64,000 nt of DNA from Macrostomum lignano. Lineage: Eukaryota. Below the pieces are notes generated by a model, which was not told the DNA's origin, searched no databases, and saw only the letters and a list, made by a program, of their open reading frames with translations. Each line of letters begins with the position of its first letter. The stretch's first letter is position 1. Shown piece after piece: positions 31,620 to 58,829 of the stretch. The translations under genes were made by a program, and so were the position numbers. The stretch covers positions 1 to 64,000 of the forward strand of contig NIVC01002395.1 of assembly GCA_002269645.1 (NCBI GenBank), given 5' to 3'.

Positions 31620-34600
31620 ATGGATAATAAAGCTAGCAAAAGCAAAGAAGAAATTAGGCGAATGATGCGGCTCACAGCCGCTAAGATGCAACTGAAAAAG
31701 CCTTCTAATGTGGTAAATAACTCTGAGGCAGCTGCTGCTGCAACTGCGACAACTTCGTCTAGCAGTTCAGCTGCACTCGATGACACAGATTCAGTCAAGG
31801 GCCACCCATTTGCCAGGTTGGTGTGCAAAGCTTTGGATCTGCGTATATCATGCGATATGTTTGCAAACACATTCATTTTGTTTAAGTCTGGAGTTGCGCT
31901 CTCGAGACACGTTGATTTGATCTAGAGACATTTCTAATAGTTTTTAGCTGGTAGATCTTTAGGCATCTATCACCAGATTAATCTCTTATATTGGATCTAT
32001 AGACACTATTTTCATCAGATAGATTAGAGATCTGTAGACACTCATAGTTACATCTGTCAGATCTATAGACACCCATAGTTACATCTGTCAGATCTATAGA
32101 CACCCATAGTTACATCTGTCAGATCTATAGACACCCATAGTTACATCTGTCAGATCTATAGACACCCATAGTTGCGTCTATTAGATCTGTAGACAGTCAT
32201 AGTTACATCTGTCAGATCTATAGACACCCATAGTTACATCTGTCAGATCTATAGACACCCATAGTTACATCTGTCAGATCTATAGACACCCATAGTTACA
32301 TCTGTCAGATCTATAGACACCCATAGTTACATCTGTCAGATCTATAGACACCCATAGTTACATCTGTCAGATCTATAGACACCCATAGTTGCGTCTATTA
32401 GATCTGTAGACAGTCATAGTTACATCTGTCAGATCTATAGACACCCATAGTTACATCTGTCAGATCTATAGACACCCATAGTTACATCTGTCAGATCTAT
32501 AGACACCCATAGTTACATCTGTCAGATCTATAGACACCCATAGTTACATCTGTCAGATCTATAGACACCCATAGTTGCGTCTATTAGATCTGTAGACAGT
32601 CATAGTTACATCTGTCAGATCTATAGACACCCATAGTTACATCTGTCAGATCTATAGACACCCATAGTTACATCTGTCAGATCTATAGACACCCATAGTT
32701 ACATCTGTCAGATCTATAGACACCCATAGTTACATCTGTCAGATCTATAGACACCCATAGTTACATCTGTCAGATCTATAGACACCCATAGTTGCGTCTA
32801 TTAGATCTGTAGACAGTCATAGTTACATCTGTCAGATCTATAGACACCCATAGTTACATCTGTCAGATCTATAGACACCCATAGTTACATCTGTCAGATC
32901 TATAGACACCCATAGTTACATCTGTCAGATCTATAGACACCCATAGTTACATCTGTCAGATCTATAGACACCCATAGTTGCGTCTATTAGATCTGTAGAC
33001 AGTCATAGTTACATCTGTCAGATCTATAGACACCCATAGTTACATCTGTCAGATCTATAGACACCCATAGTTACATCTGTCAGATCTATAGACACCCATA
33101 GTTACATCTGTCAGATCTATAGACACCCATAGTTACATCTGTCAGATCTATAGACACCCATAGTTACATCTGTCAGATCTATAGACACCCATAGTTACAT
33201 CTGTCAGATCTATAGACACCCATAGTTGCGTCTATTAGATCTGTAGACAGTCATAGTTACATCTGTCAGATCTATAGACACCCATAGTTACATCTGTCAG
33301 ATCTATAGACACCCATAGTTACATCTGTCAGATCTATAGACACCCATAGTTACATCTGTCAGATCTATAGACACCCATAGTTACATCTGTCAGATCTATA
33401 GACACCCATAGTTGCGTCTATTAGATCTGTAGACAGTCATAGTTACATCTGTCAGATCTATAGACACCCATAGTTACATCTGTCAGATCTATAGACACCC
33501 ATAGTTACATCTGTCAGATCTATAGACACCCATAGTTACATCTGTCAGATCTATAGACACCCATAGTTACATCTGTCAGATCTATAGACACCCATAGTTA
33601 CATCTGTCAGATCTATAGACACCCATAGTTGCGTCTATTAGATCTGTAGACAGTCATAGTTACATCTGTCAGATCTATAGACACCCATAGTTACATCTGT
33701 CAGATCTATAGACACCCATAGTTACATCTGTCAGATCTATAGACACCCATAGTTACATCTGTCAGATCTATAGACACCCATAGTTACATCTGTCAGATCT
33801 ATAGACACCCATAGTTGCGTCTATTAGATCTGTAGACAGTCATAGTTACATCTGTCAGATCTATAGACACCCATAGTTACATCTGTCAGATCTATAGACA
33901 CCCATAGTTACATCTGTCAGATCTATAGACACCCATAGTTACATCTGTCAGATCTATAGACACCCATAGTTACATCTGTCAGATCTATAGACACCCATAG
34001 TTACATCTGTCAGATCTATAGACACCCATAGTTACATCTGTCAGATCTATAGACACCCATAGTTACATCTGTCAGATCTATAGACACCCATAGTTGCGTC
34101 TATTAGATCTGTAGACAGTCATAGTTACATCTGTCAGATCTATAGACACCCATAGTTACGTCTGTCAGATCTACAGACACCCATAGTTACATCTGTCAGA
34201 TCTATAGACACCCATAGTTGCGTCTATTAGATCTATAGACACCCATAGCTGCATCTATCAGATCTATAGACACCCATAGTCACATCTGTCAGATCTATAG
34301 ACACACATAGCTGCATCTATCAGATCTATAGACAGACATCTCAACCCACCTACCCAGGTACAACTCTCTCAACCAGCTCACCTGTATTCTGTGCGGCTGC
34401 CCAGTGAAGTCCAGCTTACTCTGGCGCGCCCATCTGGCCTCGCGCGGTCACCGGGCCAACGCGGAGGCGCTGCGGTCCCGCGGCGGCGACCGAGCCGTGG
34501 AGATCCTGTCCGGTGCCGGGCTGAAGCGCCGGCTGCAGGAGACGTCTGAGAAGCAGCAGAAGAAGCAGCCGTCGTCTGCTCTGGGCCTGGCCTACTCCGA

Positions 34601-35623
34601 CGACGAAGAAGAAGCTGAGGACCCCGCGCCCAGCAAGAAATCTCAGCAACTGCATCAGAAACAATCGTCTGCTTCTTCTAGCCTGCTTAATAGGCAGCCT
34701 CAGCAGCAGAAGAAGCAACAGCAACAACAGCAGCAGCAATTGCCCGAAGGCTTTTTCGACGATCCGGTAGCCGACGCGCGAGCCCGGAACGTGCCCTACA
34801 AAGACCGGATGGAGGAGGAGCTCGAGCTGTTCGCTAAGGAGATGCGCGACGCCCAGGTTGAATCGGACAAAATTGCCGAGCAGGCTGAAGAGGAAGCCGA
34901 CAATGTGCGGTACCTGGAAGAGATTATCACGCAGGAGTGAGTGTCTTGGGGAATGTGTATTTTAATGATTGTTATGTTTAAATTGTGGATTCTGGGATCA
35001 GAATTATGTCAAATTCAGGGATCAGGAATATCCTCATCGTTCACGGATCAGGAATCCCCTTTAATCAGAGATGAGAAAAATCCCCATAATTCAGGAATCA
35101 GAATTATCCCTATTATTCATGGATCAGAAAAATCCTATTATTCAGGGATCAGAAAAATCCCCACTATTCAGAGTTCAGAAAAATCCCCATTATTCAGGAA
35201 TCAGAATTATCCATTATTCAGGGATCAGAAAAATCCCCACTATTCAGAGTTCAGAAAAATCCCCATTATTCAGGGATCAGAAATATCCTCATTATTCAGG
35301 GATCAGAAATATCCTCATTATTCAGGGATCAGAAAAATCCCCGCTATTCAAAGTTTTCACTTATCCCCATTTTTCAAAGTTATCTATCTTAAATTATCCC
35401 ACATGCATCGCACTCCCAACTTATTCATCCCCACCCCAGGGAGACCTGGCATCGACTTAACGAACTTGAACTGTTGAAGGAGGCGGCGACCATCAAGCAG
35501 GAGGCAAAATCGGCGATGAAGCTGGAACCGGCAGCTGGCGACGGCTCGCCAACTGATGAAGCCGACATTGATGAGGCAGAGCTTGAGCTCGGATTGGACT
35601 GTTGGCGGAAAAAGAAATTATAA
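31620..35623 (+). CDS. ZNF830: Zinc finger protein 830 (CCDC16), intact copy; exons 31620-31816, 34358-34936, 35440-35623; 319 aa
   Basis: KEEIRRMM..HPFAR|YNSLNQLTCILCGCPVKSSLLWRAHLASRGH (C2H2); LPEGFFDDPVADARARNV; EELELFAKEM; acidic tail ending CWRKKKL; total 960 nt, GT-AG. Confidence 0.92.
32027..34336. repeat. 31-bp minisatellite (ATCTATAGACACCCATAGTTACATCTGTCAG)n in ZNF830 intron 1, copy 1 (~74 units)
   Basis: Direct; variant unit TTGCGTCTATTAGATCTGTAGACAGTCATAG recurs every ~5-8 units. Confidence 0.98.
34990..35350. repeat. Degenerate 27-bp repeat (TATTCAGGGATCAGAAAAATCCCCACT) in ZNF830 intron 2; also ~43599-43959 and ~52671-53031
   Basis: Direct; source of the IIQGSEKSP pseudo-ORF. 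Confidence 0.85.
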
Positions 35624-36105
35624 CTGGAACTATTGTAAGACTACTTATAGTAACGATCGTGCATATTAATTTTACTTTCTATTCAATAGCAAGCGCGTCA
35701 AGGCAGGATCACGTGACTTAGTTTTTTATCAATGTGCAGTGTAGAACAGATGTACATTTGCCAGCTGATTGGACAGTTAAATAAACCCTAAATAAAATTT
35801 ATTTTTTAAATAATAAACTGTAAATAATTGGTCCGTTTGAATGTTAATAAAACAACCTATTAATTACTACGAATTTTTCCTTAAGTCGTTTTTTCACGAT
35901 TATATGTTCTTGGTATTGGATACTTTGGGGAGATGATCTAATGGGATGGCGCATGACTGCTTTGGAGCATGGGAAGCAATTAATTCCACGGGGGGAATTT
36001 GATGCACCGCGTAGGGCGATGGTGAGGCGGCGGAGATGGCTCTGCTGTCCAACGAATGGATAAAAGCTTGGGCTTTATGACTGCGTTGAGACCGATGAGA
36101 CTGCC

Positions 36106-39100
36106 ATGGACAATTTCACTGTATCGAACGGTCATTTTCAACGGCAGGAAGGCGTTGCTCCGTTGTCGACGTCAACAGCTTCCATAGCAACGGTTGCTGG
36201 GGGCTACGATTCGCGCGACATCTCGTCAGACGATGCGACATGGATATTGACGTCAACATTTATTATATTCACCATGCAGTCCGGTGCGTCTGGGGTGAAA
36301 GTCAGTTGAAGCGTAGATGTAATTTGGGCAATAGTGGAAAATTTCTTAGTACATTTTCTTGAAACCTAAAGACTCAACAATCTAACTGACCTAGATAAAG
36401 GCGGGTCGTAATCCAGTGTTCTGGCGCGGCGCTCTAATGTGCCAGCTAGCGGCCCAGGCTCGATTCCAAGTGCTGTCACATTGATTTTTGGGGCTAAATT
36501 CGAATCTCTGCTTGGGCCGCCCCCCCCAGGCACAGGGAAGTGTACATGCCTAACCATAAATAAAGTTAGGGCCGCTGTACACTCCTGTGTGAGTGTGTGC
36601 CTGTGCGTATGACTGCGTATGCGTATTCGCGCGCTTGTGTGCCTGCTCAGGGGAGTCTGCGGAATGGGCAGTGATGCCTCTCGCCGGTTGTGTGACAATG
36701 TCGCACACAGCCCCCCTGCCTCCAATTGAAAAGAAACTGGGATACAACCAAAGTTATCAATTGATATTAAAGCTTTCTGTAAGGTTTTATCAATGTAAAT
36801 TCTTAGAATATAGAATGGTTCGCTGAAACAGTGCCGATAAAGTAAATTTAAGTGCATGTGGCTCGTACTACTGTATAACATATATGTACACAAGGGCGCA
36901 TGGGCGCCATGGCACCAGAAGCGTTAGCAACAGTTCTCACTTTGCTTTGGAAGGGGCATGGGCACTCCTTGCCCTCTACGAACCAGATATGTTATGTACT
37001 CGTATAATAACAATTGATTACTGGGCAAGATGTTCAACCGACATCCTATTGCGATTGTTGCATCTGAAGGCTGCATACGGCTGGTCAGTCCAAGGACTGT
37101 GGGGTCGCCACACACACCCTCAATTACCCTAGCCAATGCTGGCACCCATTTTACAGCTGGGTGAACTGAAGCAATGCAGAGTTAAGCATATCTTACTCAA
37201 GGACACAAATTGTTCCGAGTTGGTCGAGAATCGAACCCCCGACAACCCCAATTATGTCCTATGCATGTTGCGTATATGCGCTTCAAGGTCATTCTCCCCC
37301 CCCCTCACTCCGATCGTCTCCGCAGGCTTCGGTCTGCTCGAGTCCGGCTGTGTAAACCCTCGCAACGAGGTGAACATCATGGTGAAAAACGTTGTCGACG
37401 TTGTATTCGGCGGCGTCACCTACTGGATGTTCGGCTACGCGCTGTCGTTCGGCGAGGATCCCGGCAACAACTGGTTCTTCGGCTGGGGCGAGTTCTTCGT
37501 TGACGCCAGCGTCGAATCAATGGGACAGAAGTTCACGACGTTCATCTTCCAGATGAGCTTTGCCACTACAGCCACTACGATTGTGTCCGGCGCGATGGCC
37601 GAGCGGACCAAGCTTACTTCGTACATAGTGTTCTCTCTGTTCAATACCATCATCTACTGCATCCCGGCGCACTGGGTCTGGGGCAGGAAGGTGCGTCTAA
37701 CACTATTAGTTGTAGTAGTATTAGTGTAGTAGCATCTCACCTAATAGTAGCAATAATAGTAGTATAACAATACATGTAATTAGTTATACTGACTTCCTAA
37801 TTACTCCAATCCGAACAGGGGTTCCTATACGAGATGGGCGTCATTGACATCGCTGGCGTGGGTCCGGTTCACTTGCTGGGCGGCGTCACTGGCCTGATTG
37901 CCACGGTGCTGCTGCGGCCTCGGATCGGCCGATTTGAAGAGGGGAAACCGCCGCCACCCATGGGCTGCCCGACTAACGTTATGCTGGGCATGTTTATGTT
38001 ATGGTGAGCAGTGTATGGGGTAGGGTAGCGGGGTGAGGTGGGTGTATGGGAGTTAGGGGGCAGGCGAGCAGAGTGAGGTGGGTGTGTGGAGTTTGGGGAC
38101 AGGCGAGCGGAGTGAGGTGGGTGTGTGGAGTTTGGGGACAGGCGAGCGGAGTGAGGTGGGTGTGTGGAGTTTGGGGACAGGCGAGCGGAGTGAGGTGGGT
38201 GTGTGTGGATTTGGGGGGCAGGCGAGCGGAGTGAGGTGGGTGTGGATTTGGGGGCAGGCGAGCGCGGACTGAGGTGGGTGTCTGGAGTTGGGCCAGAGGA
38301 ACTGAATGTCGTGAGGATGGCAAGATGATATAACAAGCAAATAATCTTTAAACTAGAAAATTCGAACCATAACAAACAGGTGGGGCTGGCTGGGCTTCAA
38401 CTGCGGCAGCACCTTCGGCATCCGTGGCGGCAAGTGGAAGCTGGCGGCCCGCTCAGCCGTGGCCACTATCCTGTCGTCTATGGGCGGGGGCCTGACCAGC
38501 CTGACTCTCACGTGAGCTGGGGAATTAAAGCCGTATTTTTTAGACAGTCTCATCTATCCATAACACATATTCGAACTTTTCGAATATTCAACTTTCAGTT
38601 TTATTATTTGCAACAAGAAGTTCGACATCGGTGATATTGTGAATGGCGTACTTGGCGCCCTGGAGGCTGTGACAGGTTTGGTTGTTGAAAACTAACGTTA
38701 ATGAATTTTTCTGTTAGTGCATAATAAATCAAAAGTCATACATGTAATAATAAATCATGACGCAGGCATGTGCGCCCTGGCCCACCCCTGGGAGGCCATG
38801 GTGATCGGCATGATTGCTGGCATAATGACCACCTTCACAACCCGCCTGGTTGAACGGCTCCGAATTGACGACCCGGTGGGAGTTGTGCCCGTGCACCTGG
38901 TCTGCGGCCTCTGGGGCCTTCTGGCTCCGGCCTTCTTTGTGGAAAATGTGCGTGCGAAATTGATTCAGCTTTGTTTAATCGTTTTTGTGGCTTTTGCGAT
39001 GCAAAAAGAATGTAAATTCTTGTTGCTTTGCGGCTGGGATTCATAACTAAGGTAAATTATTTTCAGTTGCTATGCAACTGGGTCCGTAACTAAGGTAAAC

Positions 39101-40991
39101 TATTTTCAGTTGCTATGCAACAGGGTCCGTAACTAAGGTAAACTATTTTCAGTTTCTATGCAACTGGGATCCGTAACTAAGGTAAACTATTTTCAGTTGC
39201 TATGCAACAGGGATCCGTAACTAAGGTAAACTATCCAGTTGCTATGCAACTGGGTCTATAACTAAGATAAAATATCCAGTTGCTATGCAACAGGGTCTAT
39301 AACTAAGATAAACTATCCAGTTGCTATGCAACAGGGTCTGTAACTAAGATAAACTATTCAGTTGCTATGCAACAGGGTCCGTAGCTAAGGTAAACTATTT
39401 TCAGTTGCTATGCAACAGGGTCTGTAACTAAGATAAACTATTCAGTTGCTATGCAACAGGGTCCGTAGCTAAGGTAAACTATTTTCAGTTGCTATGCAAC
39501 ATGGATCTGTAACCGAGGTAAACTATTTTCAGTTGCTATGCAACAGGGATCCGTAACTAAGGTAAACTATCCAGTTGCTATGCAACAGGGTCTGTAACTA
39601 AGATAAACTATCCAGTTGCTATGCAACAGGGTCTGTAACTAAGATAAACTATTCAGTTGCTATGCAACAGGGTCCGTAGCTAAGGTAAACTATTTTCAGT
39701 TGCTATGCAACAGGGTCTGTAACTAAGATAAAATATTCAGTTGTTATGCAACAGGGTCCGTCGCTAAGGTAAACTATTTTCAGTTGCTATGCAACAGGGA
39801 TCTGTAACCAAGGTAAACAGTTTTAGCTGCTCTCTCTCTTTAGCTCTGGTAAAGGTCATACCTATGCAAATAAAATCTCGCACCGGATGACCCCGCCCGA
39901 CAGGACATCCTGGAACAGATCACCCGAGGCCGGGCCGGAATGTTCCGCGGCGGCGGCTTCTACCTGCTGGGCGTGCAGCTCCTGGCCGCTCTGTGCATTG
40001 TGACCTGGTCTGTGCTCGTCTCACTGGCTCAGCTGCTGGTGAGTGCGGTTTAGAAAAAGGCGCGTATACTACTTTAAGTAGGAAAATGAATCAGTACTGG
40101 CTTGTTATTATTGTGGAAAAATGAAGGTTTCTGACGTTACTTAAGGAGAATAGCGGTCCTTGGACAGCAAAGGAATAGAATAGCGGTCCTTGGGCTACAC
40201 AAGAATCAGGAATAGAATAGCGGTCCTTGGGCTACACAAGAATCAGGAATAGAATAGCGGTCCTTGGGCTACACAAGAATCAGGAATAGAATAGCGGTCC
40301 TTGGGCTACACAAGAATCAGGAATAGAATAGCGGTCCTTGGGCTACACAAGAATCAGGAATAGAATAGCCGTCAAAATGACGAAAAGTAGCCGGGTGATC
40401 GCAGGTAAATCACTTTAAAAGTACATCGCGCTCCTCATCCAGGCGATCCACAAGCTGATGGGCCTTCGAGTCACCGCCGAAGAGGAGCTCCTTGGCGCCG
40501 ACTACTGCGAGCACAACATCCGGCCGGTCAGCGAGATCCTTGTCCGCGAGCCCGTCCAGGACGACATGAACGACGACGAACGCGACGATGCCAGAGGCAA
40601 GTCGACGTCGTCGTCTCCGCCGATGCCGCGGCCGCCGCCACCCCCTCCGAGGTCCAGCGGAGGCGTCCTCGGCGTCGTCAGCAGCGAGCTGAGCGTCACC
40701 CAACGGCCATCGACGCATCACGCCATCGGCAACCACGCCGTGACGATCGGCGACGCGACCGTCGACGGCGAGGCGTCCGCGTCGAATTTCCGACGACGAC
40801 GCCGAGACGAGCTTGGCGCCGGCGAACGGAGGGACAGAGTGCTGGGCCGGCTGCAGCTGCTGGCGGAGGCTGGGCGGATGATGGGTAACGGCCTGCGCCC
40901 GCCGGGACTCGTGCCGCCACCGCAGCCTCCGATGCTGCATCAGCACCCGCAGCATCCTGCAACTTGCTGCAACTGCGACAACTTCGTCTAG
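36106..40991 (+). CDS. Amt: Ammonium transporter (Amt3-type), copy 1, chimeric C-terminus; exons 36106-36283, 37326-37690, 37819-38003, 38380-38511, 38599-38675, 38766-38947, 39904-40038, 40443-40991
   Basis: DATWILTSTFIIFTMQSGFGLLESG; FQMSFATTATTIVSGAMAER; AHWVW; DIAGVGPVH; WWGWLGFNCGS; IDDPVGVVPVH (twin His); LRVTAEEELLGAD..EH; all GT-AG. Confidence 0.95.
36400..36745 (+). mobile_element. tRNA-derived SINE in Amt intron 1; also ~45008-45352 and ~54080-54424
   Basis: Head GGCGGGTCGTAATCCAGTGTT (A-box-like)..GGCTCGATTCC (B-box-like), followed by a body with a TG-rich tract; not a foldable intact tRNA. 3' end approximate. Confidence 0.6.
37020..37245 (-). mobile_element. CORE-SINE-like element (reverse orientation) in Amt intron 1; also ~45627-45852 and ~54699-54923
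   Basis: CCCATTTTACAG.TG.G..AACTGAAGCA..CAGAGTTAAG...CTTACTCAAGGACACA..GAATCGAACCC resembles the reverse-strand MIR/CORE consensus plus B box. Confidence 0.65.
38040..38285. repeat. 39-bp G-rich repeat in Amt intron 3; also ~46647-46892 and ~55718-55963
   Basis: GGGACAGGCGAGCGGAGTGAGGTGGGTGTGTGGAGTTTG, 4-5 copies. Confidence 0.9.
39045..39815. repeat. ~41-43-bp minisatellite (TAACTAAGGTAAACTATTTTCAGTTGCTATGCAACAGGGTCCG) in Amt intron 6; also ~47652-48422 and ~56723-57493
   Basis: Direct. Confidence 0.95.
40170..40370. repeat. 37-bp repeat x5 (AGGAATAGAATAGCGGTCCTTGGGCTACACAAGAATC) in Amt intron 7; also ~48777-48977 and ~57848-58048
   Basis: Direct. Confidence 0.95.
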
Positions 40992-43900: not shown

Positions 43901-44232
43901 TTATTCAGGGATCAGAAATATCCTCATTATTCAGGGATCAGAAAAATCCCCGCTATTCAAAGTTTTCACTTATCCCCATTTTTCAAAGTTATCTATCTTA
44001 AATTATCCCACATGCATCGCACTCCCAACTTATTCATCCCCACCCCAGGGAGACCTGGCATCGACTTAACGAACTTGAACTGTTGAAGGAGGCGGCGACC
44101 ATCAAGCAGGAGGCAAAATCGGCGATGAAGCTGGAACCGGCAGCTGGCGACGGCTCGCCAACTGATGAAGCCGACATTGATGAGGCAGAGCTTGAGCTCG
44201 GATTGGACTGTTGGCGGAAAAAGAAATTATAA
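40965..44232 (+). pseudogene. ZNF830: 5'-truncated ZNF830, copy 2 (lacks promoter and first ~39 codons)
   Basis: Begins at the duplication junction in mid exon 1; exons 2-3 read identical to copy 1. Confidence 0.85.
41256..42945. repeat. 31-bp minisatellite, copy 2 (20 units fewer than copy 1)
   Basis: Offset drops from 9229 to 8609 = 620 = 20x31. Confidence 0.97.
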
Positions 44233-47700: not shown

Positions 47701-49598
47701 GGTAAACTATTTTCAGTTGCTATGCAACAGGGTCCGTAACTAAGGTAAACTATTTTCAGTTTCTATGCAACTGGGATCCGTAACTAAGGTAAACTATTTT
47801 CAGTTGCTATGCAACAGGGATCCGTAACTAAGGTAAACTATCCAGTTGCTATGCAACTGGGTCTATAACTAAGATAAAATATCCAGTTGCTATGCAACAG
47901 GGTCTATAACTAAGATAAACTATCCAGTTGCTATGCAACAGGGTCTGTAACTAAGATAAACTATTCAGTTGCTATGCAACAGGGTCCGTAGCTAAGGTAA
48001 ACTATTTTCAGTTGCTATGCAACAGGGTCTGTAACTAAGATAAACTATTCAGTTGCTATGCAACAGGGTCCGTAGCTAAGGTAAACTATTTTCAGTTGCT
48101 ATGCAACATGGATCTGTAACCGAGGTAAACTATTTTCAGTTGCTATGCAACAGGGATCCGTAACTAAGGTAAACTATCCAGTTGCTATGCAACAGGGTCT
48201 GTAACTAAGATAAACTATCCAGTTGCTATGCAACAGGGTCTGTAACTAAGATAAACTATTCAGTTGCTATGCAACAGGGTCCGTAGCTAAGGTAAACTAT
48301 TTTCAGTTGCTATGCAACAGGGTCTGTAACTAAGATAAAATATTCAGTTGTTATGCAACAGGGTCCGTCGCTAAGGTAAACTATTTTCAGTTGCTATGCA
48401 ACAGGGATCTGTAACCAAGGTAAACAGTTTTAGCTGCTCTCTCTCTTTAGCTCTGGTAAAGGTCATACCTATGCAAATAAAATCTCGCACCGGATGACCC
48501 CGCCCGACAGGACATCCTGGAACAGATCACCCGAGGCCGGGCCGGAATGTTCCGCGGCGGCGGCTTCTACCTGCTGGGCGTGCAGCTCCTGGCCGCTCTG
48601 TGCATTGTGACCTGGTCTGTGCTCGTCTCACTGGCTCAGCTGCTGGTGAGTGCGGTTTAGAAAAAGGCGCGTATACTACTTTAAGTAGGAAAATGAATCA
48701 GTACTGGCTTGTTATTATTGTGGAAAAATGAAGGTTTCTGACGTTACTTAAGGAGAATAGCGGTCCTTGGACAGCAAAGGAATAGAATAGCGGTCCTTGG
48801 GCTACACAAGAATCAGGAATAGAATAGCGGTCCTTGGGCTACACAAGAATCAGGAATAGAATAGCGGTCCTTGGGCTACACAAGAATCAGGAATAGAATA
48901 GCGGTCCTTGGGCTACACAAGAATCAGGAATAGAATAGCGGTCCTTGGGCTACACAAGAATCAGGAATAGAATAGCCGTCAAAATGACGAAAAGTAGCCG
49001 GGTGATCGCAGGTAAATCACTTTAAAAGTACATCGCGCTCCTCATCCAGGCGATCCACAAGCTGATGGGCCTTCGAGTCACCGCCGAAGAGGAGCTCCTT
49101 GGCGCCGACTACTGCGAGCACAACATCCGGCCGGTCAGCGAGATCCTTGTCCGCGAGCCCGTCCAGGACGACATGAACGACGACGAACGCGACGATGCCA
49201 GAGGCAAGTCGACGTCGTCGTCTCCGCCGATGCCGCGGCCGCCGCCACCCCCTCCGAGGTCCAGCGGAGGCGTCCTCGGCGTCGTCAGCAGCGAGCTGAG
49301 CGTCACCCAACGGCCATCGACGCATCACGCCATCGGCAACCACGCCGTGACGATCGGCGACGCGACCGTCGACGGCGAGGCGTCCGCGTCGAATTTCCGA
49401 CGACGACGCCGAGACGAGCTTGGCGCCGGCGAACGGAGGGACAGAGTGCTGGGCCGGCTGCAGCTGCTGGCGGAGGCTGGGCGGATGATGGGTAACGGCC
49501 TGCGCCCGCCGGGACTCGTGCCGCCACCGCAGCCTCCGATGCTGCATCAGCACCCGCAGCATCCTGCAACTTGCTGCAACTGCGACAACTTCGTCTAG
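44714..49598 (+). CDS. Amt: Ammonium transporter copy 2, chimeric C-terminus, carries GTG (Val) at 47270-47272
   Basis: Same exon structure at offset +8607/8608. Confidence 0.93.
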
Positions 49599-52500
49599 CA
49601 GTTCAGCTGCACTCGATGACACAGATTCAGTCAAGGGCCACCCATTTGCCAGGTTGGTGTGCAAAGCTTTGGATCTGCGTATATCATGCGATATGTTTGC
49701 AAACACATTCATTTTGTTTAAGTCTGGAGTTGCGCTCTCGAGACACGTTGATTTGATCTAGAGACATTTCTAATAGTTTTTAGCTGGTAGATCTTTAGGC
49801 ATCTATCACCAGATTAATCTCTTATATTGGATCTATAGACACTATTTTCATCAGATAGATTAGAGATCTGTAGACACTCATAGTTACATCTGTCAGATCT
49901 ATAGACACCCATAGTTACATCTGTCAGATCTATAGACACCCATAGTTACATCTGTCAGATCTATAGACACCCATAGTTACATCTGTCAGATCTATAGACA
50001 CCCATAGTTGCGTCTATTAGATCTGTAGACAGTCATAGTTACATCTGTCAGATCTATAGACACCCATAGTTACATCTGTCAGATCTATAGACACCCATAG
50101 TTACATCTGTCAGATCTATAGACACCCATAGTTACATCTGTCAGATCTATAGACACCCATAGTTACATCTGTCAGATCTATAGACACCCATAGTTGCGTC
50201 TATTAGATCTGTAGACAGTCATAGTTACATCTGTCAGATCTATAGACACCCATAGTTACATCTGTCAGATCTATAGACACCCATAGTTACATCTGTCAGA
50301 TCTATAGACACCCATAGTTACATCTGTCAGATCTATAGACACCCATAGTTACATCTGTCAGATCTATAGACACCCATAGTTACATCTGTCAGATCTATAG
50401 ACACCCATAGTTGCGTCTATTAGATCTGTAGACAGTCATAGTTACATCTGTCAGATCTATAGACACCCATAGTTACATCTGTCAGATCTATAGACACCCA
50501 TAGTTACATCTGTCAGATCTATAGACACCCATAGTTACATCTGTCAGATCTATAGACACCCATAGTTACATCTGTCAGATCTATAGACACCCATAGTTAC
50601 ATCTGTCAGATCTATAGACACCCATAGTTACATCTGTCAGATCTATAGACACCCATAGTTGCGTCTATTAGATCTGTAGACAGTCATAGTTACATCTGTC
50701 AGATCTATAGACACCCATAGTTACATCTGTCAGATCTATAGACACCCATAGTTACATCTGTCAGATCTATAGACACCCATAGTTACATCTGTCAGATCTA
50801 TAGACACCCATAGTTACATCTGTCAGATCTATAGACACCCATAGTTACATCTGTCAGATCTATAGACACCCATAGTTACATCTGTCAGATCTATAGACAC
50901 CCATAGTTGCGTCTATTAGATCTGTAGACAGTCATAGTTACATCTGTCAGATCTATAGACACCCATAGTTACATCTGTCAGATCTATAGACACCCATAGT
51001 TACATCTGTCAGATCTATAGACACCCATAGTTACATCTGTCAGATCTATAGACACCCATAGTTACATCTGTCAGATCTATAGACACCCATAGTTGCGTCT
51101 ATTAGATCTGTAGACAGTCATAGTTACATCTGTCAGATCTATAGACACCCATAGTTACATCTGTCAGATCTATAGACACCCATAGTTACATCTGTCAGAT
51201 CTATAGACACCCATAGTTACATCTGTCAGATCTATAGACACCCATAGTTACATCTGTCAGATCTATAGACACCCATAGTTACATCTGTCAGATCTATAGA
51301 CACCCATAGTTGCGTCTATTAGATCTGTAGACAGTCATAGTTACATCTGTCAGATCTATAGACACCCATAGTTACATCTGTCAGATCTATAGACACCCAT
51401 AGTTACATCTGTCAGATCTATAGACACCCATAGTTACATCTGTCAGATCTATAGACACCCATAGTTACATCTGTCAGATCTATAGACACCCATAGTTGCG
51501 TCTATTAGATCTGTAGACAGTCATAGTTACATCTGTCAGATCTATAGACACCCATAGTTACATCTGTCAGATCTATAGACACCCATAGTTACATCTGTCA
51601 GATCTATAGACACCCATAGTTACATCTGTCAGATCTATAGACACCCATAGTTACATCTGTCAGATCTATAGACACCCATAGTTACATCTGTCAGATCTAT
51701 AGACACCCATAGTTACATCTGTCAGATCTATAGACACCCATAGTTACATCTGTCAGATCTATAGACACCCATAGTTGCGTCTATTAGATCTGTAGACAGT
51801 CATAGTTACATCTGTCAGATCTATAGACACCCATAGTTACGTCTGTCAGATCTACAGACACCCATAGTTACATCTGTCAGATCTATAGACACCCATAGTT
51901 GCGTCTATTAGATCTATAGACACCCATAGCTGCATCTATCAGATCTATAGACACCCATAGTCACATCTGTCAGATCTATAGACACACATAGCTGCATCTA
52001 TCAGATCTATAGACAGACATCTCAACCCACCTACCCAGGTACAACTCTCTCAACCAGCTCACCTGTATTCTGTGCGGCTGCCCAGTGAAGTCCAGCTTAC
52101 TCTGGCGCGCCCATCTGGCCTCGCGCGGTCACCGGGCCAACGCGGAGGCGCTGCGGTCCCGCGGCGGCGACCGAGCCGTGGAGATCCTGTCCGGTGCCGG
52201 GCTGAAGCGCCGGCTGCAGGAGACGTCTGAGAAGCAGCAGAAGAAGCAGCCGTCGTCTGCTCTGGGCCTGGCCTACTCCGACGACGAAGAAGAAGCTGAG
52301 GACCCCGCGCCCAGCAAGAAATCTCAGCAACTGCATCAGAAACAATCGTCTGCTTCTTCTAGCCTGCTTAATAGGCAGCCTCAGCAGCAGAAGAAGCAAC
52401 AGCAACAACAGCAGCAGCAATTGCCCGAAGGCTTTTTCGACGATCCGGTAGCCGACGCGCGAGCCCGGAACGTGCCCTACAAAGACCGGATGGAGGAGGA

Positions 52501-53304
52501 GCTCGAGCTGTTCGCTAAGGAGATGCGCGACGCCCAGGTTGAATCGGACAAAATTGCCGAGCAGGCTGAAGAGGAAGCCGACAATGTGCGGTACCTGGAA
52601 GAGATTATCACGCAGGAGTGAGTGTCTTGGGGAATGTGTATTTTAATGATTGTTATGTTTAAATTGTGGATTCTGGGATCAGAATTATGTCAAATTCAGG
52701 GATCAGGAATATCCTCATCGTTCACGGATCAGGAATCCCCTTTAATCAGAGATGAGAAAAATCCCCATAATTCAGGAATCAGAATTATCCCTATTATTCA
52801 TGGATCAGAAAAATCCTATTATTCAGGGATCAGAAAAATCCCCACTATTCAGAGTTCAGAAAAATCCCCATTATTCAGGAATCAGAATTATCCATTATTC
52901 AGGGATCAGAAAAATCCCCACTATTCAGAGTTCAGAAAAATCCCCATTATTCAGGGATCAGAAATATCCTCATTATTCAGGGATCAGAAATATCCTCATT
53001 ATTCAGGGATCAGAAAAATCCCCGCTATTCAAAGTTTTCACTTATCCCCATTTTTCAAAGTTATCTATCTTAAATTATCCCACATGCATCGCACTCCCAA
53101 CTTATTCATCCCCACCCCAGGGAGACCTGGCATCGACTTAACGAACTTGAACTGTTGAAGGAGGCGGCGACCATCAAGCAGGAGGCAAAATCGGCGATGA
53201 AGCTGGAACCGGCAGCTGGCGACGGCTCGCCAACTGATGAAGCCGACATTGATGAGGCAGAGCTTGAGCTCGGATTGGACTGTTGGCGGAAAAAGAAATT
53301 ATAA
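49572..53304 (+). pseudogene. ZNF830: 5'-truncated ZNF830, copy 3
   Basis: Same as copy 2; starts at the second junction. Confidence 0.85.
49863..52017. repeat. 31-bp minisatellite, copy 3 (15 units more than copy 2)
   Basis: Offset rises from 8607 to 9072 = 465 = 15x31. Confidence 0.97.
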
Positions 53305-53785
53305 CTGGAACTATTGTAAGACTACTTATAGTAACGATCGTGCATATTAATTTTACTTTCTATTCAATAGCAAGCGCGTCAAGGCAGGATCACGTGACTT
53401 AGTTTTTTATCAATGTGCAGTGTAGAACAGATGTACATTTGCCAGCTGATTGGACAGTTAAATAAACCCTAAATAAAATTTATTTTTTAAATAATAAACT
53501 GTAAATAATTGGTCCGTTTGAATGTTAATAAAACAACCTATTAATTACTACGAATTTTTCCTTAAGTCGTTTTTTCACGATTATATGTTCTTGGTATTGG
53601 ATACTTTGGGGAGATGATCTAATGGGATGGCGCATGACTGCTTTGGAGCATGGGAAGCAATTAATTCCACGGGGGAATTTGATGCACCGCGTAGGGCGAT
53701 GGTGAGGCGGCGGAGATGGCTCTGCTGTCCAACGAATGGATAAAAGCTTGGGCTTTATGACTGCGTTGAGACCGATGAGACTGCC

Positions 53786-56700
53786 ATGGACAATTTCACT
53801 GTATCGAACGGTCATTTTCAACGGCAGGAAGGCGTTGCTCCGTTGTCGACGTCAACAGCTTCCATAGCAACGGTTGCTGGGGGCTACGATTCGCGCGACA
53901 TCTCGTCAGACGATGCGACATGGATATTGACGTCAACATTTATTATATTCACCATGCAGTCCGGTGCGTCTGGGGTGAAAGTCAGTTGAAGCGTAGATGT
54001 AATTTGGGCAATAGTGGAAAATTTCTTAGTACATTTTCTTGAAACCTAAAGACTCAACAATCTAACTGACCTAGATAAAGGCGGGTCGTAATCCAGTGTT
54101 CTGGCGCGGCGCTCTAATGTGCCAGCTAGCGGCCCAGGCTCGATTCCAAGTGCTGTCACATTGATTTTTGGGGCTAAATTCGAATCTCTGCTTGGGCCGC
54201 CCCCCCAGGCACAGGGAAGTGTACATGCCTAACCATAAATAAAGTTAGGGCCGCTGTACACTCCTGTGTGAGTGTGTGCCTGTGCGTATGACTGCGTATG
54301 CGTATTCGCGCGCTTGTGTGCCTGCTCAGGGGAGTCTGCGGAATGGGCAGTGATGCCTCTCGCCGGTTGTGTGACAATGTCGCACACAGCCCCCCTGCCT
54401 CCAATTGAAAAGAAACTGGGATACAACCAAAGTTATCAATTGATATTAAAGCTTTCTGTAAGGTTTTATCAATGTAAATTCTTAGAATATAGAATGGTTC
54501 GCTGAAACAGTGCCGATAAAGTAAATTTAAGTGCATGTGGCTCGTACTACTGTATAACATATATGTACACAAGGGCGCATGGGCGCCATGGCACCAGAAG
54601 CGTTAGCAACAGTTCTCACTTTGCTTTGGAAGGGGCATGGGCACTCCTTGCCCTCTACGAACCAGATATGTTATGTACTCGTATAATAACAATTGATTAC
54701 TGGGCAAGATGTTCAACCGACATCCTATTGCGATTGTTGCATCTGAAGGCTGCATACGGCTGGTCAGTCCAAGGACTGTGGGGTCGCCACACACACCCTC
54801 AATTACCCTAGCCAATGCTGGCACCCATTTTACAGCTGGGTGAACTGAAGCAATGCAGAGTTAAGCATATCTTACTCAAGGACACAAATTGTTCCGAGTT
54901 GGTCGAGAATCGAACCCCGACAACCCCAATTATGTCCTATGCATGTTGCGTATATGCGCTTCAAGGTCATTCTCCCCCCCCCTCACTCCGATCGTCTCCG
55001 CAGGCTTCGGTCTGCTCGAGTCCGGCTGTGTAAACCCTCGCAACGAGGTGAACATCATGGTGAAAAACGTTGTCGACGTTGTATTCGGCGGCGTCACCTA
55101 CTGGATGTTCGGCTACGCGCTGTCGTTCGGCGAGGATCCCGGCAACAACTGGTTCTTCGGCTGGGGCGAGTTCTTCGTTGACGCCAGCGTCGAATCAATG
55201 GGACAGAAGTTCACGACGTTCATCTTCCAGATGAGCTTTGCCACTACAGCCACTACGATTGTGTCCGGCGCGATGGCCGAGCGGACCAAGCTTACTTCGT
55301 ACATAGTGTTCTCTCTGTTCAATACCATCATCTACTGCATCCCGGCGCACTGGGTCTGGGGCAGGAAGGTGCGTCTAACACTATTAGTTGTAGTAGTATT
55401 AGTGTAGTAGCATCTCACCTAATAGTAGCAATAATAGTAGTATAACAATACATGTAATTAGTTATACTGACTTCCTAATTACTCCAATCCGAACAGGGGT
55501 TCCTATACGAGATGGGCGTCATTGACATCGCTGGCGTGGGTCCGGTTCACTTGCTGGGCGGCGTCACTGGCCTGATTGCCACGGTGCTGCTGCGGCCTCG
55601 GATCGGCCGATTTGAAGAGGGGAAACCGCCGCCACCCATGGGCTGCCCGACTAACGTTATGCTGGGCATGTTTATGTTATGGTGAGCAGTGTATGGGGTA
55701 GGGTAGCGGGGTGAGGTGGGTGTATGGGAGTTAGGGGGCAGGCGAGCAGAGTGAGGTGGGTGTGTGGAGTTTGGGGACAGGCGAGCGGAGTGAGGTGGGT
55801 GTGTGGAGTTTGGGGACAGGCGAGCGGAGTGAGGTGGGTGTGTGGAGTTTGGGGACAGGCGAGCGGAGTGAGGTGGGTGTGTGTGGATTTGGGGGGCAGG
55901 CGAGCGGAGTGAGGTGGGTGTGGATTTGGGGGCAGGCGAGCGCGGACTGAGGTGGGTGTCTGGAGTTGGGCCAGAGGAACTGAATGTCGTGAGGATGGCA
56001 AGATGATATAACAAGCAAATAATCTTTAAACTAGAAAATTCGAACCATAACAAACAGGTGGGGCTGGCTGGGCTTCAACTGCGGCAGCACCTTCGGCATC
56101 CGTGGCGGCAAGTGGAAGCTGGCGGCCCGCTCAGCCGTGGCCACTATCCTGTCGTCTATGGGCGGGGGCCTGACCAGCCTGACTCTCACGTGAGCTGGGG
56201 AATTAAAGCCGTATTTTTTAGACAGTCTCATCTATCCATAACACATATTCGAACTTTTCGAATATTCAACTTTCAGTTTTATTATTTGCAACAAGAAGTT
56301 CGACATCGGTGATATTGTGAATGGCGTACTTGGCGCCCTGGAGGCTGTGACAGGTTTGGTTGTTGAAAACTAACGTTAATGAATTTTTCTGTTAGTGCAT
56401 AATAAATCAAAAGTCATACATGTAATAATAAATCATGACGCAGGCATGTGCGCCCTGGCCCACCCCTGGGAGGCCATGGTGATCGGCATGATTGCTGGCA
56501 TAATGACCACCTTCACAACCCGCCTGGTTGAACGGCTCCGAATTGACGACCCGGTGGGAGTTGTGCCCGTGCACCTGGTCTGCGGCCTCTGGGGCCTTCT
56601 GGCTCCGGCCTTCTTTGTGGAAAATGTGCGTGCGAAATTGATTCAGCTTTGTTTAATCGTTTTTGTGGCTTTTGCGATGCAAAAAGAATGTAAATTCTTG

Positions 56701-58738
56701 TTGCTTTGCGGCTGGGATTCATAACTAAGGTAAATTATTTTCAGTTGCTATGCAACTGGGTCCGTAACTAAGGTAAACTATTTTCAGTTGCTATGCAACA
56801 GGGTCCGTAACTAAGGTAAACTATTTTCAGTTTCTATGCAACTGGGATCCGTAACTAAGGTAAACTATTTTCAGTTGCTATGCAACAGGGATCCGTAACT
56901 AAGGTAAACTATCCAGTTGCTATGCAACTGGGTCTATAACTAAGATAAAATATCCAGTTGCTATGCAACAGGGTCTATAACTAAGATAAACTATCCAGTT
57001 GCTATGCAACAGGGTCTGTAACTAAGATAAACTATTCAGTTGCTATGCAACAGGGTCCGTAGCTAAGGTAAACTATTTTCAGTTGCTATGCAACAGGGTC
57101 TGTAACTAAGATAAACTATTCAGTTGCTATGCAACAGGGTCCGTAGCTAAGGTAAACTATTTTCAGTTGCTATGCAACATGGATCTGTAACCGAGGTAAA
57201 CTATTTTCAGTTGCTATGCAACAGGGATCCGTAACTAAGGTAAACTATCCAGTTGCTATGCAACAGGGTCTGTAACTAAGATAAACTATCCAGTTGCTAT
57301 GCAACAGGGTCTGTAACTAAGATAAACTATTCAGTTGCTATGCAACAGGGTCCGTAGCTAAGGTAAACTATTTTCAGTTGCTATGCAACAGGGTCTGTAA
57401 CTAAGATAAAATATTCAGTTGTTATGCAACAGGGTCCGTCGCTAAGGTAAACTATTTTCAGTTGCTATGCAACAGGGATCTGTAACCAAGGTAAACAGTT
57501 TTAGCTGCTCTCTCTCTTTAGCTCTGGTAAAGGTCATACCTATGCAAATAAAATCTCGCACCGGATGACCCCGCCCGACAGGACATCCTGGAACAGATCA
57601 CCCGAGGCCGGGCCGGAATGTTCCGCGGCGGCGGCTTCTACCTGCTGGGCGTGCAGCTCCTGGCCGCTCTGTGCATTGTGACCTGGTCTGTGCTCGTCTC
57701 ACTGGCTCAGCTGCTGGTGAGTGCGGTTTAGAAAAAGGCGCGTATACTACTTTAAGTAGGAAAATGAATCAGTACTGGCTTGTTATTATTGTGGAAAAAT
57801 GAAGGTTTCTGACGTTACTTAAGGAGAATAGCGGTCCTTGGACAGCAAAGGAATAGAATAGCGGTCCTTGGGCTACACAAGAATCAGGAATAGAATAGCG
57901 GTCCTTGGGCTACACAAGAATCAGGAATAGAATAGCGGTCCTTGGGCTACACAAGAATCAGGAATAGAATAGCGGTCCTTGGGCTACACAAGAATCAGGA
58001 ATAGAATAGCGGTCCTTGGGCTACACAAGAATCAGGAATAGAATAGCCGTCAAAATGACGAAAAGTAGCCGGGTGATCGCAGGTAAATCACTTTAAAAGT
58101 ACATCGCGCTCCTCATCCAGGCGATCCACAAGCTGATGGGCCTTCGAGTCACCGCCGAAGAGGAGCTCCTTGGCGCCGACTACTGCGAGCACAACATCCG
58201 GCCGGTCAGCGAGATCCTTGTCCGCGAGCCCGTCCAGGACGACATGAACGACGACGAACGCGACGATGCCAGAGGCAAGTCGACGTCGTCGTCTCCGCCG
58301 ATGCCGCGGCCGCCGCCACCCCCTCCGAGGTCCAGCGGAGGCGTCCTCGGCGTCGTCAGCAGCGAGCTGAGCGTCACCCAACGGCCATCGACGCATCACG
58401 CCATCGGCAACCACGCCGTGACGATCGGCGACGCGACCGTCGACGGCGAGGCGTCCGCGTCGAATTTCCGACGACGACGCCGAGACGAGCTTGGCGCCGG
58501 CGAACGGAGGGACAGAGTGCTGGGCCGGCTGCAGCTGCTGGCGGAGGCTGGGCGGATGATGGGTAACGGCCTGCGCCCGCCGGGACTCGTGCCGCCACCG
58601 CAGCCTCCGATGCTGCATCAGCACCCGCAGCATCCCCAGCAGCAGCTCAGAAATCACAGTCACTTAACTGAGGGCCGACAGCTGCAGGCATCTCAGAGGG
58701 CTGGCCAGGACAACCCTGCCTTCGGCTCCGTGGTCTGA
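53786..58738 (+). CDS. Amt: Ammonium transporter copy 3 with the native C-terminus (...HQHPQHPQQQLRNHSHLTEGRQLQASQRAGQDNPAFGSVV*)
   Basis: Same exons; last exon continues into unique sequence past 58635. Confidence 0.95.
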
Positions 58739-58829
58739 GTGTGTGTACAGTCTTGGCCCTAAATGTACATGTACACTTGGCACTAAATGTGTACAGTCTG
58801 GCACTGTTTGTACACATGATGGAACTGAA

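What the first reader, a model, noticed from the sequence alone, without database searches (positions are those of the whole stretch)
31736..58635. Very recent tandem triplication of an ammonium-transporter locus with intragenic breakpoints
Three units are identical outside the satellite except for a few 1-bp homopolymer indels and one visible coding SNP. Both breakpoints fall in coding CAG/CTG-rich tracts (ZNF830 exon 1; Amt last exon). The two junctions are identical, implying one duplication followed by unequal exchange. Net result: 3 Amt, 1 intact ZNF830 and 2 headless ZNF830. This could be a dosage change in ammonia handling. Copy number could be affected by assembly error.
Basis: partly seen in the sequence, partly recalled or inferred. 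Interest (0 to 1): 0.7.

Follow-up and report, generated by a model that had tools for sequence, protein, structure and literature searches.

The report
Young tandem triplication, flatworm ammonium-transporter locus
One of the three subgenome copies of the flatworm Macrostomum lignano carries a very young head-to-tail triplication of a 9-kb block holding most of a ZNF830-like gene and an ammonium-transporter gene; it is a clean but ordinary structural variant, and none of the three transporter copies is fully ancestral.

Summary
Three head-to-tail units (31736-40957, 40965-49564, 49572-58635) differ outside a 31-bp intronic minisatellite by only three 1-bp homopolymer indels and one substitution in about 6.9 kb. 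Both junctions are identical: CATCC-TGCAACT-TGCTG.

The window is Macrostomum lignano scaffold NIVC01002395.1:1-64000 (assembly Mlig_3_7). The two homeologous scaffolds carry ZNF830-Amt once and read straight across both breakpoints. They differ from the window by about 1.4-4.6% at substituted sites, against 0.014% between units. The event is therefore specific to one subgenome and far younger than the whole-genome duplication.

The 7-bp junction filler copies sequence 3 bp away. This fits end joining with a templated insertion (polymerase-theta-like), followed by unequal exchange.

The functional reading needs correction:
- Amt copies 1 and 2 lose 33 native C-terminal codons and the 3' UTR, gaining ATCCNCDNFV*.
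- Copies 1 and 3 carry V309E at a residue invariant in 121/121 animal Amts.
- No copy is fully ancestral, so a dosage gain is unproven.
- ZNF830 copies 2 and 3 lack the promoter and start codon.

The exact copy number cannot be verified without reads, because this is a PacBio CLR/Canu/Pilon assembly. It is an ordinary kind of variant and a tidy example.

The parts
31736..40957 (+). Unit 1 of the triplication. It holds ZNF830 from codon 39 onward, the intergenic region, and Amt up to 33 codons before its native stop.
40958..40964 (+). Junction 1 filler TGCAACT. It copies bases 4-10 of the unit start (8-nt match CTGCAACT when the preceding C is counted).
40965..49564 (+). Unit 2
49565..49571 (+). 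Junction 2 filler TGCAACT, identical to junction 1
49572..58635 (+). Unit 3. It runs into the native Amt C-terminus and downstream flank.
31620..35623 (+). Intact ZNF830-like gene (319 aa). Exons are 31620-31816, 34358-34936 and 35440-35623. It equals the annotated BOX15_Mlig009875g2.
40965..44232 (+). 5'-truncated ZNF830 copy 2. It has exon 1 remnant 40965-41045, exon 2 42967-43545 and exon 3 44049-44232. There is no promoter or ATG, and the frame is closed upstream at 40882.
49572..53304 (+). 5'-truncated ZNF830 copy 3. It has exon 1 remnant 49572-49652, exon 2 52039-52617 and exon 3 53121-53304.
32028..34334 (+). 31-bp minisatellite in ZNF830 intron 1, unit 1 (74.4 copies; A-run block pattern 3,5,4,5,4,6,4,5,4,7)
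41257..42943 (+). The same minisatellite in unit 2 (54.4 copies; pattern 3,4,5,4,4,6,7)
49864..52015 (+). The same minisatellite in unit 3 (69.4 copies; pattern 3,4,5,6,6,4,5,4,7)
36106..40991 (+). Amt copy 1: 8 exons, 607 aa, Glu309, chimeric C-terminus ...PQHP-ATCCNCDNFV*
44714..49598 (+). Amt copy 2: 8 exons, 607 aa, ancestral Val309, chimeric C-terminus
53786..58738 (+). Amt copy 3: 8 exons, 630 aa, Glu309, native C-terminus ...PQHP-QQQLRNHSHLTEGRQLQASQRAGQDNPAFGSVV*
38664..38664 (+). The only substitution between units (A here and at 56342, T at 47271). It changes GTG Val309 to GAG Glu. T is the ancestral base.

Best explanation
This is a real structural variant in one of the three subgenome copies of Macrostomum lignano line DV1, and it post-dates the whole-genome duplication.

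Step 1 (inferred from the scar). A 3' end inside the CAG-rich tail of the last Amt exon was joined to a site about 9 kb upstream, in the GCA/GCT-rich Ala tract of ZNF830 exon 1. This probably happened on the sister chromatid or during replication restart. The join involved no appreciable homology and added 7 nt (TGCAACT) copied from sequence 3 nt away. Such a scar is the signature of polymerase-theta-type end joining or of a replicative template switch. The result was a head-to-tail duplication.

Step 2 (inferred). Unequal homologous exchange between the two 9-kb units added a third unit carrying the same junction. The intronic 31-bp minisatellite then changed length independently in each unit.

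Consequences (read from the sequence).
- One intact ZNF830-like gene remains.
- Two ZNF830 copies lack the promoter, the ATG and the first 38 codons.
- There are three open Amt reading frames. The two upstream ones end 10 codons into out-of-frame ZNF830 sequence and have lost their own 3' UTR. Their transcripts would have to run into the truncated ZNF830 behind them.
- Two of the three Amt copies carry Glu at an invariant pore-helix Val.
- The event is therefore more likely a neutral or mildly deleterious young copy-number variant than an effective threefold Amt dosage increase.
For: - Unit structure and near-identity.
- Both junctions are identical and contain a 7-nt filler matching adjacent sequence. 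The chance of such a match is 0.4% within +/-10 bp and 2.3% within +/-50 bp.
- The window equals NIVC01002395.1:1-64000 of Mlig_3_7.
- Both homeologous scaffolds (L002 from NIVC01000432.1, L003 from NIVC01001481.1) carry ADK-ZNF830-Amt-MOV10 with one unit each. Both read uninterrupted across both breakpoints.
- Homeolog mismatch rates are about 1.4-4.6% per HSP and 2.2% genome-wide (PMC10733133). Units differ at 1 of about 6,920 bp.
- The satellite arrays have zero singleton monomer variants but different block orders, so the three units are distinguishable and the consensus is clean.
- Polarised markers: U2 shares two derived homopolymer states with U3 on its 5' side and the ancestral state with U1 further 3'. 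This is what a crossover hybrid predicts.
- Tandem duplications, mostly about 10-20 kb, depend on polymerase theta in C. elegans, and templated insertions are described as the hallmark of polymerase theta (PMC7368036).
- Gene models and frames. Pfam. Val309 invariance.
Against: - No reads are available, so copy number and the assignment of variants to units rest on one PacBio CLR/Canu assembly. It was polished with Pilon using short reads and RNA-seq that cannot be placed in a single unit. The assembly is known to contain expanded or collapsed copies.
- The single substitution has the derived base in U1 and U3 and the ancestral base in U2. One unequal exchange cannot produce this.
- Microhomology at the junction is only 1 nt.
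- The homopolymer markers may be consensus errors.
- Junction-spanning ORFs and the Amt tail were not found in any other data set.
Confidence: 0.6

Rival explanations
1. The junction is real but the copy number is wrong. The genome has two units, or more than three, and the assembler mis-counted near-identical 9-kb units.
For: The units are about as long as typical CLR reads. Mlig_3_7 is documented to contain incorrectly expanded or collapsed copies. The arrays share the same head and tail blocks, so only their middle parts discriminate between units. The odd A,T,A pattern of the substitution could come from mis-assigned reads.
Against: The three arrays have three different, error-free block orders and lengths. 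A mis-count would more likely give identical or noisy copies. The homopolymer markers are phased coherently.
Confidence: 0.25
2. The whole structure is an assembly artefact. The three subgenome (homeologous) or haplotype copies were chained in tandem, or a chimeric read created the junction.
For: The genome has three paralogous subgenomes, and there are three units. Polyploid assemblies are error-prone.
Against: All three homeologs are assembled separately on their own scaffolds, and each is single-copy. Homeologs differ by about 1.4-4.6% with many indels, whereas the units differ by 0.014%. The same novel junction with a templated filler occurs twice, between different satellite arrays. Chaining would not create it.
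Confidence: 0.05
3. The triplication arose in one step by a replication-based mechanism (re-replication, rolling-circle-like synthesis or serial template switching, FoSTeS/MMBIR), not by duplication followed by unequal exchange.
For: Identical junctions are equally expected under this model. A templated filler also fits template switching. If the homopolymer differences are errors, nothing specifically supports a two-step history.
Against: U2 shares two derived states with U3 and an ancestral state with U1, in positional order. That is what a crossover hybrid predicts, and it is not expected for three copies made at once.
Confidence: 0.2
4. This is an adaptive gene amplification that raises ammonium-transport dosage.
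For: All three Amt reading frames are open and include the complete Pfam domain and the conserved post-TM11 region. The intergenic region upstream of each Amt ATG lies inside the unit.
Against: Two copies carry Glu at a Val invariant in 121/121 animal Amts and conserved in a solved bacterial Amt. Two copies lack the native end and 3' UTR. No copy is fully ancestral. Two further intact homeologs already exist. No Amt gene model is annotated at any of the three loci.
Confidence: 0.1

Closest known systems
Polymerase-theta-dependent tandem duplications (C. elegans brc-1/brd-1, helq-1 and tnsl-1 mutants; BRCA1-type tumour tandem-duplicator signature)
   Same: Head-to-tail orientation, a size near 10 kb, and a non-homologous junction with a short insertion copied from the immediate flank (PMC7368036; related titles).
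   Different: This is a spontaneous germline event in a flatworm, with no known repair defect. It was followed by a further copy gain. Polymerase theta involvement is inferred from the scar only.
Unequal crossing-over in tandem duplicates (classical Bar to ultra-Bar in Drosophila; amylase and opsin arrays). Recalled from general knowledge.
   Same: A duplicate provides kilobases of homology, so misaligned exchange yields a triplicate with the same junction and a hybrid middle unit.
   Different: Only four markers exist here. Three fit a hybrid middle unit and one does not. No two-copy allele has been observed.
Amt/MEP/Rh ammonium transporters (PF00909); animal 'ammonium transporter 2/3'-type proteins
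   Same: Full-length domain match (371.9 bits, positions 2-395 of 399), 60-68% identity to mollusc and other invertebrate Amts over the core, and the D-x7-H and second His motifs are present.
   Different: There is a long low-complexity C-terminal extension with no detectable homologs, which is where the breakpoint lies. Two copies have Glu at the invariant Val309.
Expanded or collapsed copies in the Mlig_3_7 neopolyploid assembly
   Same: It is the same assembly. Such errors are documented (PMC10733133).
   Different: Those errors concern homeologs and haplovariants that are about 2% diverged. Here all three homeologs are present separately, and the units are about 100-fold more similar and joined by a novel scar.

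Membership tests
Amt/MEP/Rh ammonium transporter family | Full-length Ammonium_transp domain above the Pfam gathering score | tested here: met
   PF00909, 371.9 bits against a cut-off of 23.2, profile positions 2-395 of 399. E=1e-51 to solved Amt structures.
Amt/MEP/Rh ammonium transporter family | Conserved pore residues: Asp followed by the first His (D-x7-H) and the second His of the twin-His pair | tested here: met
   Read from the model. DIAGVGPVH starts at residue 191 and VPVHLVCG at residue 353. The assignment to the AmtB D160/H168/H318 positions is from memory of that family and was not aligned here.
Amt/MEP/Rh ammonium transporter family | Invariant Val in the L-V-x-(I/V)-T transmembrane motif | tested here: not met
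   Val occurs in 121/121 aligned sequences and in the bacterial Amt 8qj3. Copy 2 has Val. Copies 1 and 3 have Glu. The feature is not met in two of the three copies.
Amt/MEP/Rh ammonium transporter family | Ammonium or methylammonium transport activity | not testable with these tools
   Needs expression in an uptake-deficient yeast laboratory strain or in oocytes.
ZNF830 / CCDC16 | ZNF830 coiled-coil domain | tested here: met
   PF23406, 88.2 bits against a cut-off of 28, profile positions 1-80 of 81; hits named zinc finger protein 830.
ZNF830 / CCDC16 | N-terminal C2H2 (JAZ/U1-like) zinc finger | tested here: inconclusive
   zf-C2H2_jaz scores 18.1 bits, below the cut-off of 22.6. The pattern C-x2-C-x12-H-x5-H is readable in CILCGCPVKSSLLWRAHLASRGH.
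ZNF830 / CCDC16 | Complete ORF with start codon (for copies 2 and 3) | tested here: not met
   The breakpoint lies in codon 39. The ZNF830 frame is closed upstream at 40882 and 49489 with no ATG. The first in-frame Met lies beyond the zinc finger.
Tandem segmental duplication (real structural variant) | Head-to-tail units sharing one novel junction, with a single-copy state in close relatives | tested here: met
   (units and junctions). (both homeologous scaffolds are single-copy and continuous across both breakpoints).
Tandem segmental duplication (real structural variant) | Read depth proportional to copy number, and reads spanning junctions and whole units | not testable with these tools
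   No read data are reachable. Exact look-ups of junction ORFs found nothing.
Polymerase-theta-mediated end joining scar | Junction insertion of 5 nt or more, identical to sequence in the immediate flank (templated insertion) | tested here: met
   The 7-nt TGCAACT recurs 3 nt downstream, and the match is 8 nt with the preceding C. Chance is 0.4-2.3%. The criterion is as used in PMC7368036.
Polymerase-theta-mediated end joining scar | Genetic dependence on polymerase theta | not testable with these tools
   Would need genetics in the worm.
Unequal crossing-over (NAHR) product | The middle unit is a hybrid: 5' part from the distal parent unit, 3' part from the proximal parent unit | tested here: inconclusive
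   The G-run and C-run 1 make U2 like U3, and C-run 2 makes U2 like U1, which fits. The substitution pattern A,T,A does not fit. The homopolymer markers may be consensus errors.
Assembly artefact by chaining of homeologs | Units differ by the homeolog divergence (about 2%), and homeologs are missing elsewhere in the assembly | tested here: not met
   Units differ by 0.014%, against 1.4-4.6% to the homeologs. Both other homeologs are present on their own scaffolds.

The most novel reading that the evidence does not exclude
The locus would be a caught-in-the-act gene amplification that is already being remodelled. The upstream Amt copies would be expressed as chimeric Amt::ZNF830 transcripts with the truncated ZNF830 exons as 3' UTR. 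The ancestral Val309 in the middle copy would be a restoration of function, by short-tract conversion or selected reversion, after a V309E lesion had been amplified. In that case selection would be acting on transporter function within a copy-number variant a few thousand generations old or less, in a neopolyploid.
Probability: 0.07. Interest if true: 0.5.

Novelty: new member of a known kind. Interest (0 to 1): 0.3.

Why it matters
This is a tidy natural example of how a tandem gene array starts. It shows a non-homologous join with a templated scar inside two coding repeats, followed by homology-driven copy gain and very fast minisatellite divergence. The ancestral state is preserved on two homeologous scaffolds of the same genome.

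For users of the M. lignano reference, the finding flags several practical points:
- There is a copy-number-variable locus.
- One gene model (Mlig009875g3) is mis-joined across two units.
- An ammonium-transporter gene is unannotated at all three homeologous loci.
- A candidate damaging variant (V309E) is present.

It does not by itself show any change in ammonia physiology.

Tried and rejected
- Exact look-ups of the two ORFs that span the junction (231 aa on the minus strand, 177 aa on the plus strand) found no gene on record in the contig collection. No independent junction evidence was obtained.
- A search of 5.8 billion proteins with the Amt last-exon tail and its chimeric end found no hit. 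The tail is lineage-specific, and the UniProt M. lignano Amt entries are fragments without it.
- A literature search for Macrostomum plus 'ammonium transporter' found no papers.
- A scan for AATAAA/ATTAAA found none between the chimeric stop and the poly(A) signal cluster of the next ZNF830 copy. It also found none within 660 bp of the native Amt stop. The argument about 3'-end usage therefore stays weak.
- Gene conversion from a homeolog was tested as the source of the ancestral T in U2. It is not excluded, but the tract would have to be shorter than 89 bp (donor L003) or 78 bp (donor L002), and there is no positive evidence for it.
- Deriving the three satellite block patterns from one another by single events failed. 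Each pair needs at least two or three block-level changes.
- The idea that the three units are the three subgenomes chained together was rejected on divergence and on the separate presence of the homeologs.


Full report
**1. What is in the sequence**

A self-comparison of the window shows three direct, contiguous units:
- U1, 31736-40964 (9229 bp)
- U2, 40965-49571 (8607 bp)
- U3, 49572-58635

Each unit has 292 bp of unique sequence, then a 31-bp minisatellite (2307, 1687 and 2152 bp), then about 6628 bp of unique sequence.

Aligning the unique parts gives no difference in the first 292 bp. In the remaining about 6.6 kb there are only four differences:
- a G-run at 35990 that is one base longer in U1
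- a C-run at 36520 that is one base longer in U1
- a C-run at 37236 that is one base shorter in U3
- one substitution, 38664 A / 47271 T / 56342 A

The two junctions are identical over the +/-60-80 bp inspected...CAGCATCC | TGCAACT | TGCTGCAACTGCG....

**2. The minisatellite**

Tiling the arrays in 31-mers shows only three monomer variants in the body of the array (A, B, C), plus identical degenerate head and tail monomers. There is not one singleton variant among 215 monomers. The arrays differ only in the lengths of the A-runs between B-C pairs:

| Unit | A-run pattern |
|---|---|
| U1 | 3,5,4,5,4,6,4,5,4,7 |
| U2 | 3,4,5,4,4,6,7 |
| U3 | 3,4,5,6,6,4,5,4,7 |

Each pair needs at least two or three block-level events to interconvert. 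The consensus is clean, and the three units carry distinguishable internal 'barcodes'. This is what one expects of three real units whose arrays have slipped since duplication. It is not what one expects of one unit written out three times.

**3. Where the window comes from, and the genes**

The Amt exons are 100% identical to a UniProt Macrostomum lignano fragment. The ZNF830-like protein is 100% identical over its whole length to BOX15_Mlig009875g2 (PAA58243.1) on NIVC01002395.1 of assembly Mlig_3_7 (GCA_002269645.1). The fetched locus shows that window coordinates equal record coordinates.

All genes of the repeat are on the + strand.

- The ZNF830-like gene has three exons (31620-31816, 34358-34936, 35440-35623; 319 aa). 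It has a full ZNF830 coiled-coil domain and a readable C-x2-C-x12-H-x5-H finger. The minisatellite makes up most of its intron 1.
- The Amt gene has eight exons (copy 1: 36106-40991). It covers positions 2-395 of the 399-position Pfam model at 371.9 bits.
- The three homopolymer differences lie upstream of the Amt ATG or in Amt intron 1. None touches coding sequence.

**4. Breakpoints and what they do to the genes**

The 5' breakpoint (31736) is the third base of ZNF830 codon 39, in the tract GCA GCT GCT GCT GCA ACT. The 3' breakpoint (58635) is in the Amt tail, CAG CAT CC|C CAG CAG CAG.

ZNF830:
- In U2 and U3 the ZNF830 remnant retains 281 of 319 codons and all splice sites.
- It has no promoter and no ATG. 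Its frame is closed 83 nt (27 sense codons) upstream of the junction.
- The first in-frame Met lies beyond the zinc finger.

Amt:
- In the Amt frame the junction reads ...PQHP-ATCCNCDNFV-stop.
- Copies 1 and 2 (607 aa) therefore exchange the last 33 native residues for 10 foreign ones and lose the native 3' UTR. Copy 3 (630 aa) is native at this end.
- The lost part belongs to a roughly 175-aa low-complexity extension with no detectable homolog in 5.8 billion proteins.
- The conserved region just after the last transmembrane helix (EEELLGADYCEHNI, from residue 438) is retained in all copies.

By inference, transcripts of copies 1 and 2 must continue into the truncated ZNF830 behind them. The ZNF830 exon 1 donor lies 54 nt after the new stop. 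The next canonical poly(A) signals are those of that ZNF830 copy. This argument is weak, however, because the native Amt 3' region also lacks a canonical signal.

**5. The single substitution**

The substitution is GTG to GAG, Val309 to Glu, in exon 5. Val is present in 121 of 121 aligned sequences (120 database Amts plus copy 2) and in a solved bacterial Amt, within the motif L-V-x-(I/V)-T. Both homeologs have T, coding for Val. Glu is therefore derived and probably damaging.

The three copies combine the two features differently:

| Copy | Residue 309 | C-terminal tail |
|---|---|---|
| 1 | Glu | chimeric |
| 2 | Val | chimeric |
| 3 | Glu | native |

No copy is fully ancestral. This, more than anything else, weakens the reading of '3 Amt = higher dosage'.

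**6. The ancestral state is preserved in the same genome**

M. lignano DV1 consists of three paralogous subgenome copies that differ by 2.2% genome-wide (PMC10733133). The other two copies of this locus were fetched:
- L002 = NIVC01000432.1:97079-122385
- L003 = NIVC01001481.1:192214-214310

Both are collinear with the window, in the order ADK, ZNF830, Amt, 48-bp satellite, then MOV10-like helicase in L002 (L003 ends before it). Each contains one unit only and reads straight through both breakpoint sites. Their Amt exons are all present and carry Val309.

Mismatch rates to the window are about 1.4-4.6% per alignment block, with many indels. Between units the rate is 1 in about 6,920 bp. Three conclusions follow:
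- The triplication is confined to one subgenome.
- It is roughly two orders of magnitude younger than the whole-genome duplication.
- It cannot be the three homeologs mistakenly chained together.

The intron 1 satellite has 12.4 copies in L003. In L002 it has 6.8 plus 20.8 copies, split by a roughly 3-kb insertion. The window units have 54-74 copies, so this array is generally unstable.

**7. Mechanism**

The junction has at most 1 nt of microhomology. It carries a 7-nt filler (TGCAACT) that recurs 3 nt downstream, and the match is 8 nt if the preceding C is counted. The chance that a random 7-mer is found within +/-10 bp of either breakpoint on either strand is 0.4%, and within +/-50 bp it is 2.3%.

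[quoted passage not shown] A replicative template switch would leave the same scar. The first step is therefore inferred to be a non-homologous join of that type.

For the third copy, the identical junction says only that it descends from the first. The polarised markers say more:
- U2 shares two derived homopolymer states with U3 at unit offsets of about 4.25 and 4.78 kb.
- U2 shares the ancestral state with U1 at about 5.5 kb.

This is the order expected if U2 is a crossover hybrid, with its 5' part from the distal parent unit and its 3' part from the proximal one. The exchange would lie in Amt intron 1.

The substitution at about 6.9 kb does not fit, because the derived A is in U1 and U3 and the ancestral T is in U2. 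Possible explanations are:
- a short conversion tract (less than 89 bp if a homeolog was the donor)
- reversion
- a consensus or polishing error

Mlig_3_7 was assembled with Canu from PacBio CLR reads. It was polished with Pilon using Illumina and RNA-seq reads, which cannot be assigned to one unit. I leave this point unexplained.

**8. Real or artefact**

For reality:
- A novel scarred junction is present twice, between different arrays.
- The arrays are error-free but distinct.
- The markers are coherently phased.
- The homeologs are assembled separately.

Against certainty:
- It is a single draft assembly of a neopolyploid with documented copy-number errors.
- The units are about as long as the reads.
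- No read-level or independent-assembly evidence was reachable.

My estimates are about 0.85 that at least a duplication with this junction exists in DV1, and about 0.6 that the count is exactly three.

**9. Comparison with what is known, and verdict**

This is a new instance of a well-known kind of event. It combines a tandem segmental duplication with a polymerase-theta-like scar and expansion by unequal exchange, as in the classical Bar/ultra-Bar case (recalled from general knowledge). The locus is already in a public assembly and is partly reflected in its annotation (genes g2 and g3). I found no paper that describes it.

The functional suggestion of increased ammonia handling is not supported by the sequence. 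It would need expression and transport data.

Interest is modest. The locus is a neat, internally controlled example and a useful annotation warning, not a surprise.

Noticed in passing
window 38664 / 47271 / 56342: The derived Glu309 allele sits in the two outer units and the ancestral Val in the middle unit. A single unequal exchange cannot produce this pattern. It may be a short conversion, a reversion or a polishing error.
   Followed up: partly
window 42968-53304 (annotated BOX15_Mlig009875g3, PAA58244.1): The public gene model for the truncated ZNF830 joins exon 2 of unit 2 to exon 3 of unit 3, skipping a whole unit. This is an annotation artefact of identical copies. Only one model covers the two truncated copies.
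   Followed up: partly
window 36106-58738; L002 15811-20709; L003 12580-20537: No Amt gene is among the called genes at any of the three homeologous loci, although all exons are intact. The published annotation excluded transcripts that overlap repeat annotations, and the Amt introns are full of tandem repeats.
   Followed up: partly
L002 about 20588 (homeolog of window 58635): Homeolog L002 has a 21-bp CAG-rich insertion that the alignment places exactly at the site of the 3' breakpoint. The tract appears to be prone to slippage or breakage in its own right.
   Followed up: no
window 4-801, 1279-2037, 12780-13258, 15419-16525, 17019-17950, 18471-19774, 20188-21454, 23219-25223, 25746-26038, 58820-61800: The window is unusually dense in unrelated minisatellites with periods of 4-80 bp, many inside introns or running into ORFs. 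This agrees with the published 15% simple and tandem repeat content of this genome.
   Followed up: no
window 25135-26082 (+): An adenylate-kinase exon (Pfam ADK, E=7e-53) stays open into a 15-bp satellite and translates it as SYRSAS repeats. The homeolog L003 has an annotated 134-aa ADK gene, but none is among the called genes in the matching window stretch.
   Followed up: no
window 9350-10924 (-), 14423-21945 (+), 61802-63922 (-): The neighbouring genes are an EF-hand plus rhomboid-domain protein (one 524-aa ORF), an EPS8-like gene (PTB, EPS8 spectrin-like and SH3 exons separated by satellite-filled introns) and a MOV10-like helicase.
   Followed up: partly
L002 10631-13605: In homeolog L002 the intron 1 satellite of ZNF830 is split by an insertion of about 3 kb of other sequence, possibly a mobile element. 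It was not examined.
   Followed up: no
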